DNA from: Vitrella brassicaformis CCMP3155
Lineage: Eukaryota > Protista > Chromerida
Assembly: GCA_001179505.1 (NCBI GenBank)
Contig: CDMY01000429.1
Location: 13,889 to 77,888 of the forward strand
Reading direction: 5' to 3'
DNA length: 64,000 nucleotides
Below the pieces are notes generated by a model. It worked only from the letters and a program-made list of their open reading frames with translations, was not told the origin of the DNA and did not search any database. Position numbers and translations under genes: made by a program. This document shows positions 1 to 35,100 of this stretch, one piece after another (within the stretch, counting starts at the first letter, position 1; the number at the start of each line of letters is the position of its first letter).

Positions 1-161
1 TGGTTGTGCACAGCTGCCGTGATCGGAGCCCTGGTGGCTGCACATCGTATCAGGATCGGTCGCTGTGTGTCTCAGTGTCTCTGTGTGTGCGTCGGGTGTG
101 TACTGTCGTGTGTGTCGAATGCACATGGCGGGCGGGGCAATGGGCCGGCGGGCGGCACCAT
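1..161 (-). CDS. Fragment of a further copy of the acylated-protein gene (internal exons only, cut by window edge and gap)
   Basis: Matches 2586-2746, including the tggttgtgcacagc variant of the 2174-2961 copy. Confidence 0.6.
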
Positions 162-461
162 NNNNNNNNNNNNNNNNNNNNNNNNNNNNNNNNNNNNNNN
201 NNNNNNNNNNNNNNNNNNNNNNNNNNNNNNNNNNNNNNNNNNNNNNNNNNNNNNNNNNNNNNNNNNNNNNNNNNNNNNNNNNNNNNNNNNNNNNNNNNNN
301 NNNNNNNNNNNNNNNNNNNNNNNNNNNNNNNNNNNNNNNNNNNNNNNNNNNNNNNNNNNNNNNNNNNNNNNNNNNNNNNNNNNNNNNNNNNNNNNNNNNN
401 NNNNNNNNNNNNNNNNNNNNNNNNNNNNNNNNNNNNNNNNNNNNNNNNNNNNNNNNNNNNN
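162..461. other. Assembly gap (300 N placeholder)
   Basis: Exactly 300 N, like the other three gaps. Confidence 1.
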
Positions 462-1018
462 TGTCATATTTCGAATTCCTTCCTTGCTGCCGTTTGTTTT
501 GTCCATGCGGTACGTATGACTGTCGTTGGTAATTAAGTGATTCGGCAGTTGTGTGCACACACTGACACGTGCAGACAGTCAGTCAGAATACACATGTACT
601 GTATACGTATGTGTGTATGTCATGTCGATCGTTGGTATACAGAGGCGCGGCTGACGCCTGTATTTAACAGTGTGTGTGGCTGGTGACATGGACACTTAAC
701 AATCGGTGGCCGCGACGTCAGTCAGTCCACTTGTTCACACACGTCGACGTCGGCACGTACCATCGACACAAAAGTGCTAATTAGCACACATACACATAGG
801 TCTTCGATATCACGGCGTACTCACTGAAGCCCACAAAGGTCAACGACACATCCATCAGGTAAGCGAGGCCCAGGCAGCTTCAACACACGAATGCACACCT
901 GCACGCGACGTACCGACATGACAGCCACATGGGATTACTGCCATCATGCAGAGCACACAGCGCACGTGGCTGTTGGGCCAGTGCCCACCGAAGATGGTCA
1001 TGTATGTGAATGAGTGCA

Positions 1019-1824
1019 TCAGGTGCGGCCCTCGGGCCGCGTCGACTCGATAATGACATCACCTCCGTAGGCCTGACCACACAGACACAGACAGCCACGC
1101 CTTTCACCCGTTACACACTGCCACTTGTGTGTCTCTCTCTGTGTGTGTCAGCCTACCTCTGTGGGCAGCGGTCTGTTCAGGACGTGCTCGTTGACTTCTC
1201 GTGTCAGCTCAGCCATCTCTGTAAGTGAAGCCACACACACAGAGAGACATAATGCCAACACTAGTGGATGGATGGATGTCATGTGTGTGTGGCCTCTCTC
1301 TCTCCCCCTCACTGACTGTCTTCCTTCGTCAGGGCAAACAGCAGACTTTCCTCGAGGGAATCCCCGCCGACCGACAACACACGCATCCGGGGGCGCAAGT
1401 CGACTGCACCCGCATAATGAGGCCATGACACACAGTGACGGTCTGTCTCCCTCACTTTGTGTCGTCTGTGGGGCCGTCGGCTGTCCGATCGTTTGCTGGT
1501 GGTACACAGCTGCCGTGATCGGAGCCCTGGTGGCTGCACATCGTATCAGGATCGGTCGCTGTGTGTCTCAGTGTCTCTGTGTGTGCGTCGGGTGTGTACT
1601 GTCGTGTGTGTCGAATGCACATGGCGGGCGGGGCAATGGGCCGGCGGGCGGCACCATCATCACACCAGGACCTAAGGGAGACACACACACACGAGCCCAG
1701 TGGACACAGCAGCACGACTCCCTCCCGACTCATTCACGCATACCATTCTGCATGACGGGAGGTCCATACGGCATCATCGTGGGGGCAGACGCCTCGTGGT
1801 GCGGCCAATACCCCACTGGGGCGC
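1019..1824 (-). CDS. 3' part (6 exons) of a small Pro-rich protein, copy B: ...GAPVGYWPHHEASAPTMMPYGPPVMQNGPGVMMVPP...DLRPRMRVLSVGGDSLEESLLFALTKEDKMAELTREVNEHVLNRPLPTEAYGGDVIIESTRPEGRT*
   Basis: Minus-strand exons with GT-AG sites join in consistent phases (1,1,1,1,0) and end at TGA 1021-1019. Differences from copy C fall mostly in the predicted introns. Confidence 0.6.
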
Positions 1825-2961
1825 CTGCAGCACACGGACAGAAGACAGAGGGGACATCATGCAGTTAGTTGCANNNNNNNNNNNNNNNNNNNNNNNNNNN
1901 NNNNNNNNNNNNNNNNNNNNNNNNNNNNNNNNNNNNNNNNNNNNNNNNNNNNNNNNNNNNNNNNNNNNNNNNNNNNNNNNNNNNNNNNNNNNNNNNNNNN
2001 NNNNNNNNNNNNNNNNNNNNNNNNNNNNNNNNNNNNNNNNNNNNNNNNNNNNNNNNNNNNNNNNNNNNNNNNNNNNNNNNNNNNNNNNNNNNNNNNNNNN
2101 NNNNNNNNNNNNNNNNNNNNNNNNNNNNNNNNNNNNNNNNNNNNNNNNNNNNNNNNNNNNNNNNNNNNNNNNNCAGCCACGCCTTTCACCCGTTACACAC
2201 TGCCACTTGTGTGTCTCTCTCTGTGTGTGTCAGCCTACCTCTGTGGGCAGCGGTCTGTTCAGGACGTGCTCGTTGACTTCTCGTGTCAGCTCAGCCATCT
2301 CTGTAAGTGAAGCCACACACACAGAGAGACATAATGCCAACACTAGTGGATGGATGGATGTCATGTGTGTGTGGCCTCTCTCTCTCCCCCTCACTGACTG
2401 TCTTCCTTCGTCAGGGCAAACAGCAGACTTTCCTCGAGGGAATCCCCGCCGACCGACAACACACGCATCCGGGGGCGCAAGTCGACTGCACACACACAAA
2501 TAAATGGACGCCATGACACACAGTGACGGTCTGTCTTCCTCACTTTGTGTCGTCTGTGGGGCCGTCGGCTGTCCGATTATGTGTTGGTTGTGCACAGCTG
2601 CCGTGATCGGAGCCCTGGTGGCTGCACATCGTATCAGGATCGGTCGCTGTGTGTCTCAGTGTCTCTGTGTGTGCGTCGGGTGTGTACTGTCGTGTGTGTC
2701 GAATGCACATGGCGGGCGGGGCAATGGGCCGGCGGGCGGCACCATCATCACACCAGGACCTAAGGGAGACACACACACACGAGCCCAGTGGACACAGCAG
2801 CACGACTCCCTCCCGACTCATTCACGCATACCATTCTGCATGCCGGGAGGTCCATACGGCATCATCGTGGGGGCAGACGCCTCGTGGTGCGGCCAATACC
2901 CCACTGGGGCGCCTGCAGCACACAGACAGACGACAGAGGGGGCATCATGCACTTAGTTGCA
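1092..2961. repeat. Near-identical duplicated segment 1092-1873 versus 2174-2961, separated by a 300-N gap (1874-2173)
   Basis: Direct alignment by eye. The copies differ by several SNPs and small indels (e.g. ccgcataatgagg vs acacacacaaataaatggacg), so they are paralogues or alleles rather than a perfect contig overlap. Confidence 0.9.
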
Positions 2962-3157
2962 TTGTGTGCCGCTCACCGTGTGGAGTGAATTTCATTTCGG
3001 TGTCGGTGTCGGACTCGTGACGCGACAGAAAGCACCCGCAGCACGTCTGAACAAATGCGACCCACACAGTGAAGTCACGCACAGTGCATCCCCCATGGCT
3101 GGCTACTCAGCTGACCTTTTCAGAGGGCCTGACGGGGTTGCTTTGTTTGGCGCCCAT
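2239..3157 (-). CDS. 5' part of the small N-myristoylated/S-palmitoylated protein, copy C (MGAKQSNPVRPSEK|TCCGCFLSRHESDTDTEMKFTPHG...)
   Basis: Exon 1 is 3157-3116 (14 codons, phase 0) and exon 2 is 3046-2977 (phase 1), joining the exons shared with copy B. MGxxxS motif followed by a CCGC cluster. Confidence 0.65.
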
Positions 3158-3592: not shown

Positions 3593-5172
3593 ATGGCGGC
3601 GCACAAGACGTTTCTTCTGGTCGCACTGTGCATCCTCGTAGAACTCCTCGTCACCGCCAATGGCGCCCATGAGCAGAGTAAGACCTCCTGGCCCACTGGC
3701 CTGCAGGCATGCCTGCAATGCTGCATTTGGTCTGCATGCGTTCATTCATTCTCGATCTGCCGGTGCGTCAATGTGCGCCCATCGACGAGAAATACGTGCG
3801 CCATGCGTTCATATGTGCGTGTGTGTGGGGGGGCTGCACTGTTGCAATGCAGGGACGTCTGCCGAACTGTCCCTCGTGCAGCTGCAGGAGCAGCTTGACC
3901 GCTACCAGGAGGCCATCGATGCCTTCAACCGCACCACAGCGGCCGCCAACAACCTCGCCCTCCTTGCGCACAACGTCCTCCACCACGCTCAGCAAATACT
4001 CCCGCAACCTCTGACGCACCTCAGTGAATACGTAAGGGCGACACCAGCTGAACTCCACACGTCAATGGACCGCTGCTCTTGTGCTGATTGTGTGTCAGAG
4101 TGACATCTTCGATGCCGTCCTTCACGGCGATGATGCGGCGGTCAATCAGCTGCTGGAGGGGGACCCCACACTGATCGACAAACGAGACTTCTATGGGGTG
4201 TGCAATCGGGAAGGACGATAGAAATGCGCTCAGTGGTCTGTCTGTGTGTTCTCATCAATGCGCGCAGAGGACACCGTTCCTCGATGCTGCTGAGAAGGGT
4301 CACGTGGGCGTCATGAAAGCCATCCATGAGAGCAAATCTGACGTGCTGCAGCAAACAACAGACGTACGCGGTACCGACACAGACAAAGAATGATCTGTGC
4401 TGCTGGTGAGTGATGAGGAGCGATGTGTGTGTTGGCTGTGATGCAATGCAGGATAAAAAGAATGCCCTGCACCTCGCTGCCTACGATGGTCATGTTGCGG
4501 CGGTCGATCAGCTGCTGGAGTGGAATCCCAAACTGATCGATGCAGCTGACAAGGTGACAGAGCACACACACGTCTCTGACACCTCAGTGTGCCAACTGTG
4601 TGTGTGTGCGTTGATTGCAGTATGACAACACGCCACTCATGGGGGCTGCCTTCGGTGGTCATGTCGAGGTGATGGAGGTTTTGTATGCCAAAGGAGGGGA
4701 AGAGCTTCTCAAACAGACGAACAATGTGAGACCTCATTCGCGAAACAGAAACACAGAATGCCTCTCATCTGTCTGATTGCCTTTGCCTGTCTGCATGACA
4801 CACACAGGACAACTGGACGGCACTCCATTGGGCTGTATGGGGGGCTGCGCGCCATGGCAACTCTGCAGCTGTGTCTCAGCTGTGAGCGACACAGATGACT
4901 GACTGACGCGAATGTCTCATCCAATCTCTCTCGGTCTCTCTGTGTGTCTGTCTCAAAGGCTCAAGTGGTATCCCGAACTGCTCGACATCGAAGACAACGA
5001 CGTCAGTACACACAGACATTCACACCATCGATGGTTTGAGTCTTGTGCTTATCGCATCTCATGACGGCAGGGGAAGACGCCGTGGGACTTGGCGGAGAGG
5101 TACAACGAGGCGGAGATCGGAGGGATCATGGCGAACATCAACAAGTGTCAAGAAATTCAATTCGTAGGCTAG
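3593..5172 (+). CDS. Signal-peptide-bearing ankyrin-repeat protein (about 6 repeats, 9 exons)
   Basis: MAAHKTFLLVALCILVELLVTANG leader. Exons read SDIFDAVLHGD.., RTPFLDAAEKGHV.., DKKNALHLAAYDGHV.., YDNTPLMGAAFGGHV.., DNWTALHWA.., GKTPWDLAE..*. All splice phases are consistent. Confidence 0.85.
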
Positions 5173-27322: not shown

Positions 27323-28354
27323 CTACCGCTTGTACTTCGCCATGATCTCTATGATCTCCGGCTCTTCCTCCGCCATATCCCACGGCGTCTTCCCCTGTCG
27401 TTGAGCACATCACTCGACCCATCGATGGTGTGAATGTCTGTGTGCACTCACCTCGTTGTCTTTGATGTCGACCAGAGCACCGCCGCCCCACTCGAGCCTT
27501 TGAGGATGACACAGAGGCAGAGAGAGAGTGGGTGAGACACTCGCGTCAGTCAGTCATCTGTGTCGCTCACAGCTGAGACACAGCTGCAGAGTTGCCATGG
27601 CGCGCAGCCCCCCATACAGCCCAATGGAGTGCCGTCCTGTTGTCCTGTGTGTGTCATGCAAACAGGCAAAGGCAATCAGACAGATGAGAGGCATTCTGTT
27701 TCTGTTTCGCGTGTGAGGTCTGACCTCGTCCTTCTGAGTGAGAAGCTCTTCCCCTCCTTTGGCATACAAAACCTCCATCACCTCGACATGACCAATGCCG
27801 GCAGCAAAGAAGAATGGCGTCTTGCCAAACTGCAATCAAGACACACGCACACACACAATCGACACAAAGGAGGTGTCAGAGACGTGTGTGTGCTCTGTTG
27901 CCTTGTCGGCTGCATCGATCAGTTCGGGATTCCACTCCAGCAGCTGATTGACAGCCGCAACATGACCATCGTAGGCAGCGAGGTGCAGGGCATTCTTTTT
28001 ATCCTGCATTGCATCACAGCCAACACACACATCGCTCCTCATCACCAGCAGCACAGATCATTCTGTGTCTGTGTCGGTACCGCGTACGTCTGCTGTTTGC
28101 TGCAGTACGTCAGGTTTGCTCTCATGGATGACTTTCATGACGCTCACGTGACCCTCCTGTGCAGCCACGAGGAAGGGCGTCATCTGCGCGCGGGAATGAG
28201 AACACACAGCCAGACCACTGAGCGCATTTCTGTCGTCTTTACGATTGCATACCTTGAAGGTGTTTCGTTTGTCGAGTATGTCCTTGCCGTCTCGGGCGAT
28301 GAGCGAACGAACGTCTTGCGTATCGCCGGCCTTGGCGGCATCGAAAATGTCATT
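27323..28354 (-). CDS. Ankyrin cassette of kinase-ankyrin gene K1 (7 exons; may be out of frame with its kinase)
   Basis: NDIFDAAKAGD.., MTPFLVAAQEGHV.., DKKNALHLAAYDGHV.., FGKTPFFFAAGIGHV.., DNRTALHWA.., GKTPWDMAEEE..YKR*. Exons and introns are near-identical to 4099-5172. Confidence 0.85.
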
Positions 28355-28419: not shown

Positions 28420-30027
28420 GTGTTTGATCTGTGGCTTGGACCGGCGCGGGTGCTGGGGAGGGGCCTCGGTCGCTGAGCTTGTCCAGCAGCTTATTGCAAT
28501 ATGCAGCACACCAGATGCACAGACAGACATAGTGCAGACGACATTGGCTATGCAACATAGCGTACACATTGGCCCTTTCATTGACATCGCCCTAATCCGA
28601 CCTCTTGTGCGCTCGGCCGGCTTTTGGCATTGAAGGCGAAACAGCTCTGATTGGCCACGCGAACAACGAGAGAGTCACATCCACCATTTATGCAGCACTG
28701 TGCGCCCAATGTCTTGCCTGGATGGCCTGTTTGACATTGACGGGGGCACTCTGGGGGATAGGGGGCGTCTGCACGACACAGAGACACGCGTGCTGACAGA
28801 TGTTGGTCCACACAGTTGTGCAGCCGCACACCTCTTTGTTATCGTATATCTTCTGCTTGATTTGTCCCTTGCTGAGGCCGGCGAAGGGCGGAGACGCTGC
28901 AGACACAAATGGCATACCGACGCACCTGTCTGACGTCCTGTCTGCCGTGGTCTCTGTGTCTCACTCACTCACCGCCGAATATCTCAGCAAAGATCAGCCC
29001 GACTGACCAGATGTCCGACTTGAGCTCCAACTTGGGCCCTGAGAGACGTCAAGAGTCTCATGAGGTGTCTGTGTGTGTCATGCTGTGGTCACTTTCTGTG
29101 AGGGCCTCTGGAGAGGCATACACTGGAGTTCCCGCTGGAACCACGGATCCAATGGGTCGCTCTGAAAGATACATGATTTGCGTCTTCTCACCGAACTCAA
29201 TGAAGCTCAGGTGCGACCTCTGGTCCGGCATAACCCAAGCTAGACCAAAGTCTGAGAGCTTCACATTTCCATCGTTGTCCAACTGCACATCAAGCAGCGG
29301 AGACACACGGATGCGTACACAGAGAATGTGACTGCTGTATGTCCCAGTCACCAGAACGTTGTCAGGCTTGAGGTCGCGATGGCCGATGCCGTGGCTATGA
29401 GCATGGATCAGGCCCTCACATATCTGGCAAACACAAAACACCGATATTCGCGTCGAAGTGGGAAGCGTATCGCCCGCCTCACCTGCTTGGCATATTTATA
29501 CTGCAGGTGCTCAGGGACTTCCCCCGCCCTCTGACGCAGTTTCTTGAGGCACTTGTCCAGTGAGTCCTCGTAATATTCTGCAGAAGGGACGGCATGCAAT
29601 GTTCTGTCTGTTGTTGTATCCTCACCCATGACGAGAAAGGGGATTTTCCTGCCGTAGCACACGCCCAGCAACTTCACCACGTGCGGGTGCTGCAGACGGG
29701 CCAATGCGTCCGCTTCCTGTAGAACTCTGTCTTTCAGACCCTGCACAGTTGCACGTCCGGCCCAGCCGATGTCATTGCCGCCGATTACACATTGCTACCT
29801 CTTTGCCCAGTACGTCTTCCAGTTCCCTTTTGGCCCTCTTGATGGCGACTCTCCGATCCCCCCACATGGCCCTGTACACCAATGCGAAACCGCCGCCTCC
29901 TGACAGGGCAGTCCACCCAAACGAGTGTCCGGTGTGTGAATGAGTCGGCTCCGTGTTTCTCACCAACGTAGTCTTCTTCTTCATCCCAGTGAAGATCATG
30001 GATGTTAATTACGCAAGGGCGCGCTTT
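28420..30027 (-). CDS. Ser/Thr (TKL-like) protein kinase domain, gene K1; 5' end unresolved (possible extra exons to about 30430)
   Basis: VGGGGFALVY, VAIK, LQHPHVVKLLG, GHRDLKPDNVL, KLSDFGLA, GTPVYASPE, SDIWSVG, RPSAQELL. Splice phases are consistent within the domain. Confidence 0.85.
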
Positions 30028-32161: not shown

Positions 32162-35100
32162 CTATCGCTTGTACGGCCGCATGATCTCTCTGATCTTCGG
32201 CTTGTCATATTTCACCGTATAGTCCCACGGCGTCTGCCCCTGTTGTGATGAGATGAGATGAGCACACCACTCGACCCATCGATGGTGTGAATGTCTGTGT
32301 GTACTCACGTCATTGTTTTTGATGTCCAGCAGAGCACCGCCGCCCCACTCGAGCCTTTGAGAATGACACACACAGGGAGAGAGAGAGAGAGTGTGTGGAT
32401 GAGATGTTCGCGTCAGTCAGTCATCTGTGTCCCTTACAGCTGAGACACAGCCGCAGATTTGCCACAGCCTGCAGCCCTATGGAGTGCCGTGTCTCCAAGC
32501 TGTGTGTGTCATGCACACAAAGGAAAGGCAATCAATCAGATGAGAGAAGACTGTGTGGTCTCACCTTGTTGGTCTGTGTGAGCAGTTTTTCCCCTCCTTC
32601 GGCATACATTGGCTCCAACACATCGACATGACCATTTCCAGCAGCCATTATGAATGGCGTGTTGCCACGCTGCAATCAACACACACGCACAGACACACAC
32701 TGAGGCGTCGGATACATGTGTGTGCTCTCTTACCTTGCCGCGTGCGTCGATCAGTTTGGGATCCCACGACAGCAGCTGATTGACCGCGGCAAGACGGCCA
32801 TACTCAGCAGCCCAATGCAGGGCATTCTCACCATACTGCATACCATCACAGCAACACACATCTCCTCCTCATCATGACCAGTAGCAGCACACAAGATGGT
32901 TTGTCTGTGTCGGTACCTCGTCTGTTTGCTTCAGTACGTCCGGTTTTCTCTCATGGATGACTTTCATGACGCCCACGTGACCCTCCTCTGCAGCCAACAG
33001 GAAGGGTGTCCTCTGCAGGAATGAGAGCACACAGACAGACCACTGAGGGCATTCCTTTCATTTTGACCACTGCGTACCGCCGCGTATCCGTATCGTTTGT
33101 CGAGTATGTCCTTGCCCTCCTTTGCGATGAGCAAACGAACCGACTCCTCATCGTTGTCCCTGACCGCTTTGAAGATGTCATTCTGACACACACCCAGCAC
33201 AAGAACAGCGGCCCATTGACAAATGGGGTTCAGCTGGTGTCTTCCTGACGTGTTTGATCTGCGGCTGTGGGGCGCTCGGCGGTGTCTTCACTACCCGAAG
33301 CTGGCTTAAGAGTCCTGCACGACACACACAGAGCCACAGCAATATATTTATTATTATTTCACGACACACAGAGCATGGATTGCTGTCGCTCTCTCTCTGT
33401 CTGTGTGTGTGTGTGTGTGTGTGTCCCCGCAGACCTCTGTGCTGTGAGGGCGGCTGAGAGGTCTTGGCCAGACTGCTTGTCGGCCCCGTTGTGGTGCTGA
33501 CAGTGCTCATGTGGACACCCGACGAATGGCCGACGGGAGACACACTTGTTCTTGGCGAGGCAGCCGCTGCAGACCACAACGAGAGACACAATGACGAACA
33601 CTTCTTATGTCCGACTCGAGAAGGTGTGAAGATGGACTTTGTCGCTTTGAGCTTCCAAACAGCCACCTCAGCGGGCCCTTGTGCGATGGCTCAGCAGCCA
33701 TGTTCTCCTTTGCCGTGTCCGTGTCCCTGTCTGGTTGGGGAGGGGAGGGAGTCGGAAGAGGCGAGATCTTCAACTTGTCGAGGACCTGCCATCAAGACGC
33801 ATCAAGTGTATGAGCCTTCCTTCCCTTTGTGTGGATGTGACTTGTCGGGCTGTGGGACGACTGGCCGCCTTAAAGGCAAAACAACTCTGATAGACGCAAA
33901 GAGGGGAAAGGAGGTAGTGAAGGAGAGAGAGAAAAGTAACACATATCGTCGGTTGGTCTGCCTTGATGGCGTCCTTGATGTGCGGCGGCAGAGATGCCGG
34001 GATGGCGGGGATCTGACATGAAAGGCGACACGTGGTAACAGCAGAGCCATAGCAGTCTGATGACATTGTACCTCTTTCATGTTGACGACTTTGTGGCTGA
34101 TCTGCGGGGGCCCTTTGCCCTCAAACGGCCGCCGACCTGCACCCAAAGTCGGTCGTGGCGCTTTGTTGTTGGGGTATGTTACAGAGGATCTGCTGCTGAC
34201 CTCCGTGAATCTCCCCCAGTACTGAAGACGCCAACACACACACAGATGGACAAGAGAGAGACGATGAAGAAATAGTTGTGGGATGGCTTACTGCCGCCCA
34301 AAGCCCATATGTCCGCCTTGACGGTCAGCTTGTCCACTGAAAGACACAACCACAAGGGCCCCCAGTAACATCGACTCGCTTTGCTTACAGTCTGTGTCGA
34401 AGCCCTCGGGCGGCATATAGTTTGCGGTCCCGCCGATAAAGGTAAGTGTTGTATTCCTCTGAGCGCCGCGAATCATCCCAAAGTCGGATATTTTCAGAGT
34501 AAGGCGTTCACCCAACTGACAGACAAACAAGTGGGAGAACGACAAGAGCTCTGCAACTCTATGAAAGAGAGGCTCTCTGTCGTGGCCGACCAGAATGTTC
34601 TCCGGTTTCAGATCTCTGTGGACGATGCCCTGATCATGCAAGTACTGCAGACCCTCACAGATCTGTGACCAACACACACACAGATGATGAAAGACACAAG
34701 AGACCTCTGTGATGCCATGTTCCTTTCGACCTGTTTGGCGAACCTGTCTCGCACGTCGGGCGGCAGCGGCCCGTGTTTGGCCAAATAGTCCGCCAGGGAG
34801 CCGCCCTCACACAACTCTGACGAGAATGAGAAGAGGAGACATCAGAGGGGACAAGGCCGATGGACGAGAGGAAGAATAGACTGACTACCTAGGACAATCA
34901 TGAGTCCGTGTTTGTCGTCTCGGCAGACGCCCAGCAGCTGCACTATGTTGGGGTGTCGGAGCTGAGCCATCGGGAATGCCTCCTTGAGCACTTCCATGAA
35001 CTGCGACTGCACACAAACAAACCGATCCAGCAACAAAGAGGGGGAGGCGTGTTCTTGAGGCTCTCGCTTGCTGGGCACCGCTTGGTCGAGCTCTTCATTT

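What the first reader, a model, noticed from the sequence alone, without database searches (positions are those of the whole stretch)
4621..4725. DARPin-like hypervariation: ankyrin copies differ almost only at binding-surface residues
Repeat 4 of the SP gene (4621-4725, YDNTPLMGAAFGGHVEVMEVLYAKGGEELLKQTNN) and of K1 (27829-27725, FGKTPFFFAAGIGHVEVMEVLYAKGGEELLTQKDE) differ at 12 of 35 residues. Codons 13-30 are nucleotide-identical and the adjacent introns and next exon are nearly identical. The changes sit in the beta-turn and first helix, the concave ankyrin binding face that is randomised in designed ankyrin proteins (established). K2 (32669-32565, RGNTPFIMAAGNGHV..) and repeat 3 (DKKNALHLAAYDG vs YGENALHWAAEYG) vary at the same positions. 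This pattern fits strong diversifying selection or targeted diversification of a recognition repertoire coupled to kinase signalling, i.e. a candidate immune-like sensor family in a protist (inference).
Basis: partly seen in the sequence, partly recalled or inferred. Interest (0 to 1): 0.8.

Follow-up and report, generated by a model that had tools for sequence, protein, structure and literature searches.

The report
Fast-evolving ankyrin binding face, patched by gene conversion
Two neighbouring genes of the coral-associated alga Vitrella brassicaformis share an ankyrin-repeat module that recent gene conversion has made almost identical, except for a short island at the likely binding surface; across the whole gene family those surface positions change 2-4 times faster than silent sites, as in immune-type receptor families, though what they bind is unknown.

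Summary
SP repeat 4 (4621-4725) and K1 repeat 4 (27829-27725) differ at 12 of 35 residues, and codons 13-30 are nucleotide-identical. The organism is Vitrella brassicaformis CCMP3155. SP is protein P0126 (signal-peptide-like N-terminus plus six ankyrin repeats, spliced RNA found). K1 is P0023 (kinase plus the same module).

The sharp contrast between identical flanks and a variable patch comes from recombination. SP and K1 share recent conversion tracts (97-100% identical, introns included). The patch lies in an island between them, where the neutral intron flank is also 20% diverged against 3.7% elsewhere, and each gene is closer to other paralogues than to its partner.

Diversifying selection is supported at family level. 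In 12 modules, nonsynonymous divergence at the a-priori DARPin positions is 0.53, against 0.28 synonymous and 0.15 intronic (66 of 66 pairs). This holds against synonymous sites interleaved in the same patches.

Variable cassettes also move between paralogues by conversion. Targeted or somatic diversification has no support, and an immune-like role is untested. The closest known kind is fungal NLR ankyrin repeats.

The scan had already noted this family on other DNA of this genome (s1-239435, s1-233268).

The parts
3593..5172 (+). SP gene (= annotated protein P0126, 294 aa). Exons: 3593-3677, 3853-4031, 4099-4197 (A1), 4268-4363 (A2), 4452-4553 (A3), 4621-4725 (A4), 4808-4881 (A5a), 4959-5001 (A5b), 5071-5172 (A6 + stop).
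   Evidence: Exon model from GT-AG sites and frames. Its translation equals P0126 exactly. Spliced contigs of runs X11 and X12 join 4196/4267, 4363/4452, 4551/4619 and 4725/4808 with no mismatch on the exons. Pfam Ank_2/Ank.
4621..4725 (+). SP repeat 4 exon (the finding): 35 codons, phase 0 at both ends.
4584..4655 (+). Island of SP/K1 divergence: the last ~37 nt of the A3-A4 intron plus the first 12 codons of A4 (variable residues 1-3, 6-8, 11-12). About 69% identity, against 97-100% on both sides.
4712..4738 (+). Second small island: the last 5 codons of A4 (hairpin loop leading into repeat 5) plus the first 13 nt of the downstream intron; 9 differences in 27 nt.
4359..4583 (+). SP-K1 shared tract 1 (end of A2, intron, A3, 5' half of the next intron): 7 substitutions plus a 4-nt indel in 225 nt. 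Contains the run of 70 concordant polymorphic sites.
4656..4911 (+). SP-K1 shared tract 2 (A4 helix 2, intron, A5a, start of the next intron): 4656-4711 is 100% identical and 4739-4911 is about 98% identical, interrupted by the small island at 4712-4738.
4130..4178 (+). A3-type sequence inside SP repeat 1 (88% identical to SP A3 at 4492-4540): an inter-repeat conversion patch. K1 and K2 have a different, shared A1 sequence here.
4964..4985 (+). A3-type sequence inside SP repeat 5b (18 of 20 identical to K1 A3), replacing the family-wide EWGGGAL segment.
27323..28354 (-). K1 ankyrin module. Exons: 28354-28253 (A1), 28183-28088 (A2), 28003-27902 (A3, followed by a GC donor), 27829-27725 (A4), 27644-27571 (A5a), 27497-27452 (A5b), 27394-27323 (A6 + stop).
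   Evidence: All exon peptides are found in the annotated protein P0023.
28500..29867 (-). K1 kinase-domain exons (P0023 residues 1-272): VAIK, HRDLKPDN, DFG and SPE are present. The annotated model starts at Pfam Pkinase profile position 25.
32162..33182 (-). K2 ankyrin module. Exons: 33182-33078, 33012-32917, 32835-32734, 32669-32565 (A4), 32499-32438, 32354-32309, 32239-32162.
   Evidence: Transcript contig L006 matches these exons at ~100% with introns removed, through A5a.
34389..34515 (-). K2 kinase activation-segment exon (DFG...PPE), used as the search entry point.

Best explanation
SP (P0126) and K1 (P0023) belong to a Vitrella brassicaformis gene family built around a six-repeat ankyrin module with one repeat per phase-0 exon. 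The module is attached to different N-terminal parts: kinases of several lineages, a signal-peptide-like leader, a calpain, MORN repeats, or nothing.

The module evolves by two opposing forces. (1) Frequent short-tract non-reciprocal recombination (gene conversion) between paralogues, and even between repeats, homogenises scaffold codons and introns. (2) Diversifying selection keeps, and keeps renewing, differences at the beta-turn and helix-1 positions that form the concave binding face.

The SP/K1 pair shows this directly. Two recent conversion tracts made about 500 bp nearly identical. The variable block at the start of repeat 4 is an unconverted (or separately converted) island with older ancestry, so it carries family-typical divergence.

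Shown: the mosaic, the conversion tracts, dN>dS at a-priori surface positions, the ankyrin fold, and expression and splicing of SP and K2. Inferred: that the variable face binds diverse ligands and that the family is a recognition repertoire. Its targets and biological role (defence, symbiosis or substrate targeting) are unknown.
For: Mosaic structure: the topology switches along the gene. The sliding scan gives SP-K1 identity of 0.93-1.00 in two blocks and 0.69-0.86 in the island, where each gene is closer to other paralogues.

Conversion: SP-K1 share a run of 70 concordant polymorphic sites (p<=0.0005). Other pairs share tracts that include variable patches: L3/L4b in A4, L1b/L4c in A3, L2a/L2b in A2. 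A3-type patches sit inside SP A1 and A5b.

The island is older DNA: its intron flank shows 8/40 differences against 7/191 elsewhere in the tract (p=0.0011), while the family mean on the same columns is 0.134, so low constraint does not explain it.

Selection: mean pN at DARPin positions is 0.528, pS 0.277, intron 0.152 and framework pN 0.122, with pN_D>pS in 66/66 pairs. Independent pairs give p=4e-13. The local control against interleaved synonymous sites gives 0.40 v 0.16, p=8e-9.

Fold and register: Pfam, DARPin alignment, AF2 pLDDT 96.7, and best Foldseek matches to DARPins at TM 0.85, 1.9 A.

Expression: spliced SP contigs in two runs and a K2 transcript contig.

Module exchange: kinase domains are 30-35% identical where ankyrin modules are 61-71% identical, and the reverse holds in another subgroup.
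Against: No donor with >=95% identity to either island was found; only 12 of the perhaps 25-30+ modules of the genome were sampled.

Within the island's exon part there is almost no synonymous difference (0.5 of 9.7 sites). That is what in-situ selection would give, although with family pS of 0.26 over ~5 usable sites this is not significant.

Part of the intron-flank divergence lies in a (TG)n run, where alignment is ambiguous.

The pairwise NG86 counts are not independent and are not a codon-model test. Recombination-aware site tests (PARRIS, GARD+MEME) could not be run.

Introns may be constrained by end-to-end pairing, so 'intron < synonymous' is not purely a conversion signature.

There are no population data, no ligand and no functional data.
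Confidence: 0.7

Rival explanations
1. In-situ positive selection after a recent duplication. SP and K1 modules were fully identical recently, and the 15 nucleotide changes in the first 12 codons of repeat 4 arose by point mutation fixed by very strong selection, with no recombination involved in the patch.
For: Almost no synonymous change inside the patch (Sd 0.5 of 9.7 sites against Nd 12.5 of 32.3). Several codons differ at 2-3 positions. No high-identity donor was found among 12 modules.
Against: The intron sequence abutting the patch is 20% diverged against 3.7% in the rest of the tract (p=0.0011). The differing intron sites are ones that are polymorphic among other paralogues. SP and K1 are each nearer to other paralogues than to each other across the island. 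Conversion tracts, some of which carry variable patches, are demonstrable in the family. Zero synonymous change over ~5 usable sites is expected about one time in five at family pS of 0.26.
Confidence: 0.15
2. Relaxed constraint without adaptive meaning. Surface residues of a solenoid scaffold are simply free to drift, and SP in particular is a decaying kinase-less copy, so the pattern reflects neutral change plus scaffold conservation.
For: Whole-module omega for SP-K1 is about 1.16. SP's framework pN against other modules (0.18-0.23) is higher than K1's (0.12-0.17). SP has D at the conserved G4 and L at the conserved F8 of repeat 4. Some downstream modules are truly broken (L4c stop, L2b deletion).
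Against: Neutral drift gives dN about equal to dS, not 2-4 times dS. At a-priori positions pN exceeds pS in 66/66 pairs, and it exceeds interleaved synonymous sites in the same patches. SP has an intact 9-exon frame identical to the annotated protein, and correctly spliced RNA carrying its own repeat-4 patch is found in two runs.
Confidence: 0.08
3. Programmed diversification. The variable patches are rewritten on a short time scale (somatically or at high germline frequency). For example, silent kinase-less modules downstream of expressed genes could act as donors for cassette conversion, with the conserved introns acting as homology arms.
For: Kinase-less modules, some of them broken, lie immediately downstream of four kinase-ankyrin genes and share variable patches with expressed genes. 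Introns are more conserved than synonymous sites in 66/66 pairs. Exon borders fall inside the hypervariable beta-turn.
Against: DNA contigs of runs X1 and X4 and RNA contigs of X11 and X12 match the window exactly over the SP patch; the only 'other letters' are K1 cross-mapping. No such downstream module exists next to SP, K1 or K2 in this window. Contigs do drop rare variants, so this is absence of evidence only.
Confidence: 0.05

Closest known systems
Fungal NLR (STAND) proteins with hypervariable ANK, TPR or WD repeats (Podospora NWD/HNWD family; Dyrka et al. 2014, PMC4986451; Chevanne et al. 2010, PMC2873952)
   Same: A conserved repeat scaffold; positively selected sites on the concave ANK face (inner helices and beta-hairpin); concerted evolution with repeat exchange within and between family members; combinatorial N-terminal effector domains (read; here).
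   Different: No NACHT or NB-ARC domain here; the partner domains are kinases, a signal peptide, calpain or MORN. Conservation is between paralogous modules at the same repeat index, not between the repeats of one protein (repeat types A1-A6 are distinct). Each repeat is a separate exon with conserved introns. The host is an alveolate alga, not a fungus.
Designed ankyrin repeat proteins (DARPin libraries)
   Same: The same fold (TM 0.85, 1.9 A) and the same register. The family consensus reads xxxGxTPFxxAAxxGHV..., with variation at library positions 2, 3, 5, 13 and 14.
   Different: Position 33 is conserved here, while positions 9 and 10 (fixed H and L in DARPins) and position 1 vary. Repeats are 32-40 residues long, with a short extra helix in the loop. 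This is a natural family, with variation between paralogues.
RIPK4 / ANKK1-type kinases (N-terminal kinase, C-terminal ankyrin repeats)
   Same: K1 and K2 have the same domain order: kinase, then ankyrin repeats.
   Different: The nearest solved kinases to K1 are NEK7, CDKs, PDK1 and PKR/GCN2, not RIP kinases. Outside the family the next sequence relatives are generic Ser/Thr kinases at about 30% identity. The architecture is most likely convergent.
MHC and plant NLR-LRR clusters: exon diversity maintained against intron homogenisation (established population-genetic pattern, from my own knowledge)
   Same: Introns are less diverged than the synonymous sites of the adjacent selected exons; sequence-exchange tracts are present; dN>dS at ligand-contact codons.
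   Different: Here the comparison is among paralogues of one genome, not alleles. The scaffold is ankyrin. No ligand or immune role is known.

Membership tests
Ankyrin repeat proteins (Pfam PF00023 / PF12796) | Sequence match to the Ank profiles above the curated cut-off | tested here: met
   P0126 (SP): Ank_2 82 bits and Ank 65 bits. P0023 (K1): Ank_2 81 bits and Ank 62 bits. Single exons reach 17-21 bits.
Ankyrin repeat proteins (Pfam PF00023 / PF12796) | Helix-turn-helix plus hairpin solenoid fold | tested here: met
   AF2 model of K1 residues 273-470: pLDDT 96.7, pTM 0.92, paired helices in each repeat. Best PDB matches are DARPins and natural ankyrin domains, TM up to 0.85.
DARPin-like randomisation pattern | Variation concentrated at positions 2, 3, 5, 13, 14 and 33 of each repeat on a fixed framework | tested here: inconclusive
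   Positions 2, 3, 5, 13 and 14 are the most variable columns (5-9 residue types among 12 modules), and framework columns mostly show 1-3. Position 33 is conserved, and positions 9, 10 and 1 also vary. As a class, pN is 0.53 against framework 0.12.
Eukaryotic protein kinases (Pfam PF00069), for K1 | Kinase domain with catalytic Lys (VAIK), HRD, DFG and APE motifs | tested here: met
   Pkinase 139 bits; VAIK, HRDLKPDN, DFG and SPE are present in P0023.
Eukaryotic protein kinases (Pfam PF00069), for K1 | Glycine-rich ATP loop | tested here: inconclusive
   The annotated model starts at profile position 25. A GxGxxG motif search upstream found no convincing exon. The model may be N-terminally incomplete.
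NLR / STAND receptors | Central NACHT or NB-ARC nucleotide-binding domain | tested here: not met
   No such Pfam family in P0126 or P0023, nor among the precomputed Pfam lists of the family members.
NLR / STAND receptors | High internal conservation (>85%) between the repeats of one protein | tested here: not met
   Repeats A1-A6 of one gene are distinct types. Within the window only short A3-like patches are shared between repeats.
RIPK4 / ANKK1 (TKL-group ankyrin kinases) | Kinase domain of the RIP/TKL type | tested here: not met
   No RIP kinase appears among the best 60 solved relatives of the K1 kinase; the best are NEK7, CDK, PDK1 and PKR/GCN2.
Gene family under diversifying selection | dN > dS at a predefined class of sites | tested here: met
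   (pairwise Nei-Gojobori counts). Codon-model tests were not available.
Gene family under concerted evolution / gene conversion | Shared fragments longer than expected from overall divergence; topology changes along the alignment | tested here: met
   Permutation test on runs of concordant polymorphic sites; sliding nearest-neighbour scan; three-way alignment.
Secreted proteins (for SP) | Cleavable N-terminal signal peptide | not testable with these tools
   The N-terminus has a short basic n-region and a ~15-residue hydrophobic core followed by small residues. No signal-peptide predictor was available.

The most novel reading that the evidence does not exclude
The family is a cassette-exchange recognition system. 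The kinase-less, partly broken six-repeat modules that lie immediately downstream of expressed kinase-ankyrin genes would serve as silent donors. The unusually conserved introns, each bracketing a hypervariable beta-turn, would act as homology arms. Single-repeat 'binding cassettes' could then be copied exon by exon into expressed receptors. This would be a eukaryotic-alga analogue of pseudogene-templated diversification (chicken Ig pseudo-V, VSG, vlsE) built on an ankyrin scaffold.
Probability: 0.1. Interest if true: 0.85.

Novelty: new variant of a known kind. Interest (0 to 1): 0.55.

Why it matters
Repertoires of repeat-protein receptors that diversify at their binding face are known from animals (LRR-based VLRs, NLRs), plants (NLR-LRR) and fungi (NLRs with ANK, WD or TPR repeats). 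Nothing comparable has been described for alveolates, the group that includes apicomplexan parasites, dinoflagellate symbionts and their free-living relatives. My literature searches found no paper on it.

This family offers a compact natural 'DARPin library' of about 200 residues with a defined variable surface. It is fused to catalytically plausible kinases and also occurs as a probably secreted form. That makes it directly testable: which ligands do the paralogues bind, and do they respond to bacteria, viruses or the coral host?

It is also a clean example of how conversion and selection together produce 'identical introns, different binding residues'. It serves as a caution too: such a contrast in one gene pair shows recombination first, and shows selection only once the whole family is analysed.

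Tried and rejected
1. Reaching full-length proteins with the word-indexed search from exons was not possible: all exons are <=42 aa and the length window excludes longer proteins. I used the representative search with a non-repeat kinase exon instead. I avoided an ankyrin exon as query because multi-repeat giants would dominate the summed scores.

Searches used exon references, and full-length work used the database proteins P0126 and P0023, which a script showed to equal my exon models. Joining was done only inside scripts, for translation and codon counts.

3. Donor search for the repeat-4 islands among 12 modules found nothing above ~0.9 identity in 45-nt windows, so it is inconclusive.

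4. 'Zero synonymous change in the patch' as a discriminator was rejected as underpowered.

5. 'The intron flank is diverged because it is unconstrained loop' was rejected: family-wide divergence on those columns (0.134) is not higher than on other intron columns (0.165).

7. The 3' end of transcript contig L006 first looked like an alternative K2 C-terminus. It is the 3' end of another gene (P0136), so the contig is an assembly chimera.

8. Inter-strain polymorphism: run X4 carries a different organism label, but its contigs are identical over SP, so nothing can be concluded.

9. Residue-level mapping of exposure on the AF2 model was not possible because no coordinates are returned. I used secondary structure and the DARPin register instead.

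Full report
OBSERVATION. SP repeat 4 (4621-4725, + strand) and K1 repeat 4 (27829-27725, - strand) differ at 12 of 35 residues. Codons 13-30 are identical at the nucleotide level. The following exon differs at one base, and the downstream intron differs at four substitutions and one 2-nt indel. Alignment of the exon to designed ankyrin proteins fixes the register. Exon residues 1, 3, 11 and 12 are DARPin library positions 3, 5, 13 and 14, and residues 31 and 33 correspond to positions 33 and 2. Residues 2, 6, 7 and 8 are positions that DARPins keep fixed (G4, L8, H9, L10). All six library positions differ, against six of the other 29 (hypergeometric p about 6e-4, my arithmetic). Two sub-claims are inexact. 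The upstream intron is not 'nearly identical' next to the patch (see below). And four of the twelve differences lie at DARPin framework positions.

GENES AND ORGANISM. The region is eukaryotic, with many 60-90-nt GT-AG introns, and each ankyrin repeat is one phase-0 exon, with repeat 5 split by a phase-2 intron. A representative search with a K2 kinase exon led to a full-length relative. The word search from that relative named the organism, Vitrella brassicaformis CCMP3155, and listed about 20 related proteins. A second search with the ankyrin part added about 20 kinase-less ones. K1 is the annotated protein P0023 (470 aa, kinase plus six repeats). My nine-exon SP model translates exactly to the annotated protein P0126 (294 aa). 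SP has a signal-peptide-like N-terminus, a ~60-residue helical-looking linker and the six repeats, and it has no kinase. K1 has VAIK, HRDLKPDN, DFG and SPE, but its annotated model lacks the glycine loop.

Expression is shown for two of the three genes. Spliced contigs from two runs (X11, X12) join SP exons at precisely the modelled boundaries and carry the SP-specific repeat-4 exon without a mismatch. A JGI transcript contig (L006) matches K2 exons at ~100% with introns removed; its 3' end belongs to another paralogue (P0136), so that contig is an assembly chimera. K1 expression was not checked. Its intron after repeat 3 has a GC donor.

WHY SP AND K1 LOOK THE WAY THEY DO. A three-way alignment including introns shows that the relationship changes along the gene. 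In repeat 1, and from repeat 5b to the stop, K1 groups with K2 (and at 95-98% with paralogues on other contigs), while SP is different. From the end of repeat 2 to repeat 5a, SP and K1 are nearly identical. In window coordinates, 4359-4583 has 7 substitutions and one 4-nt indel, 4656-4711 is 100% identical, and 4739-4911 is about 98% identical. A GENECONV-type permutation gives SP-K1 a run of 70 concordant polymorphic sites (p<=0.0005, the floor of the test). Between the blocks lies an island, 4584-4655, at about 69% identity. It comprises the last ~37 nt of the intron and the first 12 codons of repeat 4. A second small island, 4712-4738, covers the last five codons and 13 nt of the next intron.

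In the 45 alignment columns of intron that abut the patch, SP and K1 differ at 8 of 40 sites, against 7 of 191 in the other intron sequence of the tract (Fisher p=0.0011). The family-wide divergence on those same columns (0.134) is not higher than on other intron columns (0.165), so weaker constraint does not explain the difference. The differing intron sites are ones that also vary among other paralogues. Across the island, SP and K1 are each closer to third paralogues than to each other.

The simplest reading is that recent non-reciprocal exchange homogenised most of the module, and the patch sits in a stretch that was not converted or was converted from elsewhere. The striking 'identical flanks, different binding residues' therefore reports recombination first. 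The near absence of synonymous change inside the patch (0.5 of 9.7 sites) does not argue against this. Only about 5 synonymous sites lie in codons with the same amino acid, and the family-wide synonymous divergence there is 0.26.

Short-tract exchange is also visible within SP itself. Positions 4130-4178 of repeat 1 are 88% identical to repeat 3, where K1 and K2 have a quite different shared sequence. Positions 4964-4985 of repeat 5b match repeat 3 at 18 of 20, where the rest of the family has the conserved EWGGGAL segment.

THE FAMILY. I fetched five genomic loci of the nearest paralogues and found nine further six-repeat modules with the same exon-intron structure. Together with SP, K1 and K2 these make twelve modules. 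The protein alignment shows a strongly conserved scaffold, loops and second helices, with variation concentrated in the turn before helix 1 and in helix 1. Residue diversity per column is 5-9 types at positions 3, 5, 10, 13 and 14, and mostly 1-3 elsewhere.

With site classes fixed beforehand from the DARPin design (27 codons over repeats 2-6), Nei-Gojobori counts over all 66 pairs give the following means:
- nonsynonymous divergence at DARPin positions: 0.528
- nonsynonymous divergence at helix positions 9 and 10: 0.391
- nonsynonymous divergence at the 141 framework codons: 0.122
- synonymous divergence: 0.277
- intron divergence: 0.152

The surface class exceeds synonymous divergence in 66 of 66 pairs. 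For SP and K1 against the others, corrected dN/dS is 1.6-4.6 at surface positions and 0.3-0.9 at framework positions. Six phylogenetically independent pairs give 0.415 against 0.197 (Fisher p=4e-13). Because conversion could homogenise regions unevenly, I repeated the comparison inside the turn/helix-1 patches only, setting variable codons against the conserved codons interleaved with them. That gives 0.53 against 0.25 in all pairs, and 0.40 against 0.16 in independent pairs (p=8e-9). Neutral drift at unconstrained surface sites would give parity, not a two- to four-fold excess. Recombination-aware codon models could not be run.

CONCERTED EVOLUTION AND MODULE EXCHANGE. Introns are less diverged than synonymous sites in all 66 pairs. 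The repeat 3-4 intron is recognisably the same sequence in modules whose proteins are only ~60% identical. This matches the pattern known from MHC genes, where recombination homogenises introns while selection preserves exon diversity and the silent sites linked to it (my knowledge). An additional contribution from intron structure is possible: four of six SP introns fold end to end, with (CA)n near the donor pairing with (UG)n near the acceptor.

Conversion tracts sometimes carry the variable patches themselves. L3 and L4b share an identical repeat-4 patch, L1b and L4c share repeat 3, and L2a and L2b share repeat 2. Four kinase-ankyrin genes are followed immediately by a second, kinase-less module, and two of these are broken by a stop or deletions.

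Kinase and ankyrin histories disagree. Among K1, P0019, P0022, P0015 and P0012 the kinases are mostly 30-35% identical but the ankyrin modules are 61-71% identical. In the P0011/P0013/P0002/P0014 group the relation is reversed. K1's kinase is 36% identical to the K2-type kinase. The module is thus exchanged or homogenised across otherwise divergent genes.

STRUCTURE. An AlphaFold2 model of the K1 module built on a 14-sequence family alignment is very confident (pLDDT 96.7, pTM 0.92). In repeat 4, helix 1 spans exon residues 5-12, helix 2 spans residues 15-25, and a short extra helix spans residues 28-31. Variable residues 1-3 therefore lie in the turn, 6-8 and 11-12 lie in helix 1, and 31-35 lie in the hairpin loop. 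The best solved matches are DARPins (TM 0.85, rmsd 1.9 A) and natural ankyrin domains.

WHAT IT MOST LIKELY IS. It is a lineage-specific repertoire of ankyrin binding modules. Their concave face is kept diverse by selection, while conversion keeps scaffold and introns uniform and occasionally moves binding cassettes between genes. The modules are coupled to various output or targeting domains.

The closest described kind is the fungal NLR family with hypervariable ANK, TPR or WD repeats. In those proteins, positive selection maps to the concave face (inner helices and beta-hairpin) and repeats undergo concerted evolution within and between genes (PMC4986451, read). This family is not an NLR, since there is no NACHT or NB-ARC domain. 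Nor is it a RIPK4/ANKK1 relative.

Whether it serves defence, symbiosis or substrate targeting is unknown. The 'immune-like sensor' label is an inference from the evolutionary signature alone. Programmed or somatic diversification has no support: DNA and RNA contigs from four runs show no variation in the SP patch, although contigs cannot exclude rare variants. My literature searches found no description of this family. Earlier notes of this scan had flagged the same family on other pieces of this genome, and my tests agree with them.

LIMITS. Only 12 modules were analysed out of a family that is clearly larger. The pairwise counts are not independent, apart from the six-pair subset. Alignment in (TG)n runs is uncertain. 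All runs were Logan contigs, not raw reads. The signal peptide is judged by eye. K1 RNA was not examined. The joined spliced proteins were never typed into a search; database entries identical to them were used instead.

Noticed in passing
window 27900-27901 (- strand; first two bases of the K1 intron after repeat 3): K1 has a GC donor (AAG|gcaaca) where SP has GT (AAG|gtgaca). The annotated K1 protein uses this junction. It is either a GC-AG intron or a splice-site lesion.
   Followed up: partly
L002 4280-5213; L004 13154-14151; L005 7980-9043; L001 13628-13816: Second, kinase-less six-repeat modules lie directly downstream of kinase-ankyrin genes. L004's copy has an in-frame stop in repeat 2, L002's copy has a truncated repeat 1 and a 23-nt deletion in repeat 3, and L001 retains only repeats 5b and 6. 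They share variable patches with intact genes.
   Followed up: partly
P0002, P0019 and P0128 C-termini (loci L002 and others): Several family members end in ...GPCCVIM, a CaaX-like prenylation box preceded by cysteines. This suggests membrane anchoring of a subset. SP, K1 and K2 lack it.
   Followed up: no
window 3629-3630 and 3683-3818 (SP exon 1 / intron 1): DNA contigs of runs X1 and X4 read AC instead of TG at 3629-3630. One contig form replaces 136 nt of SP intron 1 with 32 other letters. This may be a second allele or a second copy of the SP 5' end.
   Followed up: no
L006 (JGI 3300017148 contig, 1932 nt): This transcript contig is a chimera. Its 5' 1550 nt are K2 (100% identity, spliced, with some retained kinase-region introns), and its 3' end is from the gene of P0136. 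The switch lies inside the family-conserved repeat-5 segment, which warns against short-read transcript assemblies for this family.
   Followed up: yes
window 4198-4267, 4364-4451, 4554-4620, 4882-4958 (SP introns): Four of six SP introns fold end to end, with donor-proximal (CA)n pairing to acceptor-proximal (UG)n (for example an 11-bp stem in the repeat 3-4 intron). Z-scores against dinucleotide shuffles are modest (-1.1 to -2.6). This may contribute to the intron conservation.
   Followed up: partly
window ~30394 and ~31426 (- strand, upstream of K1): An identical ~55-codon stretch occurs twice about 1030 nt apart, which suggests a tandem duplication upstream of the annotated K1 start.
   Followed up: no
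window 1-3000: Two runs of N (assembly gaps) and repeated segments: the same ORF translations recur at about 4-519, 1125-1868 and 2504-2956. The assembly is locally uncertain just upstream of SP.
   Followed up: no
L001 2540-9914 (- strand): A 1483-aa gene combines the same six-repeat module with a calpain (Peptidase_C2) domain and a kinase domain, another architecture carrying the module.
   Followed up: no
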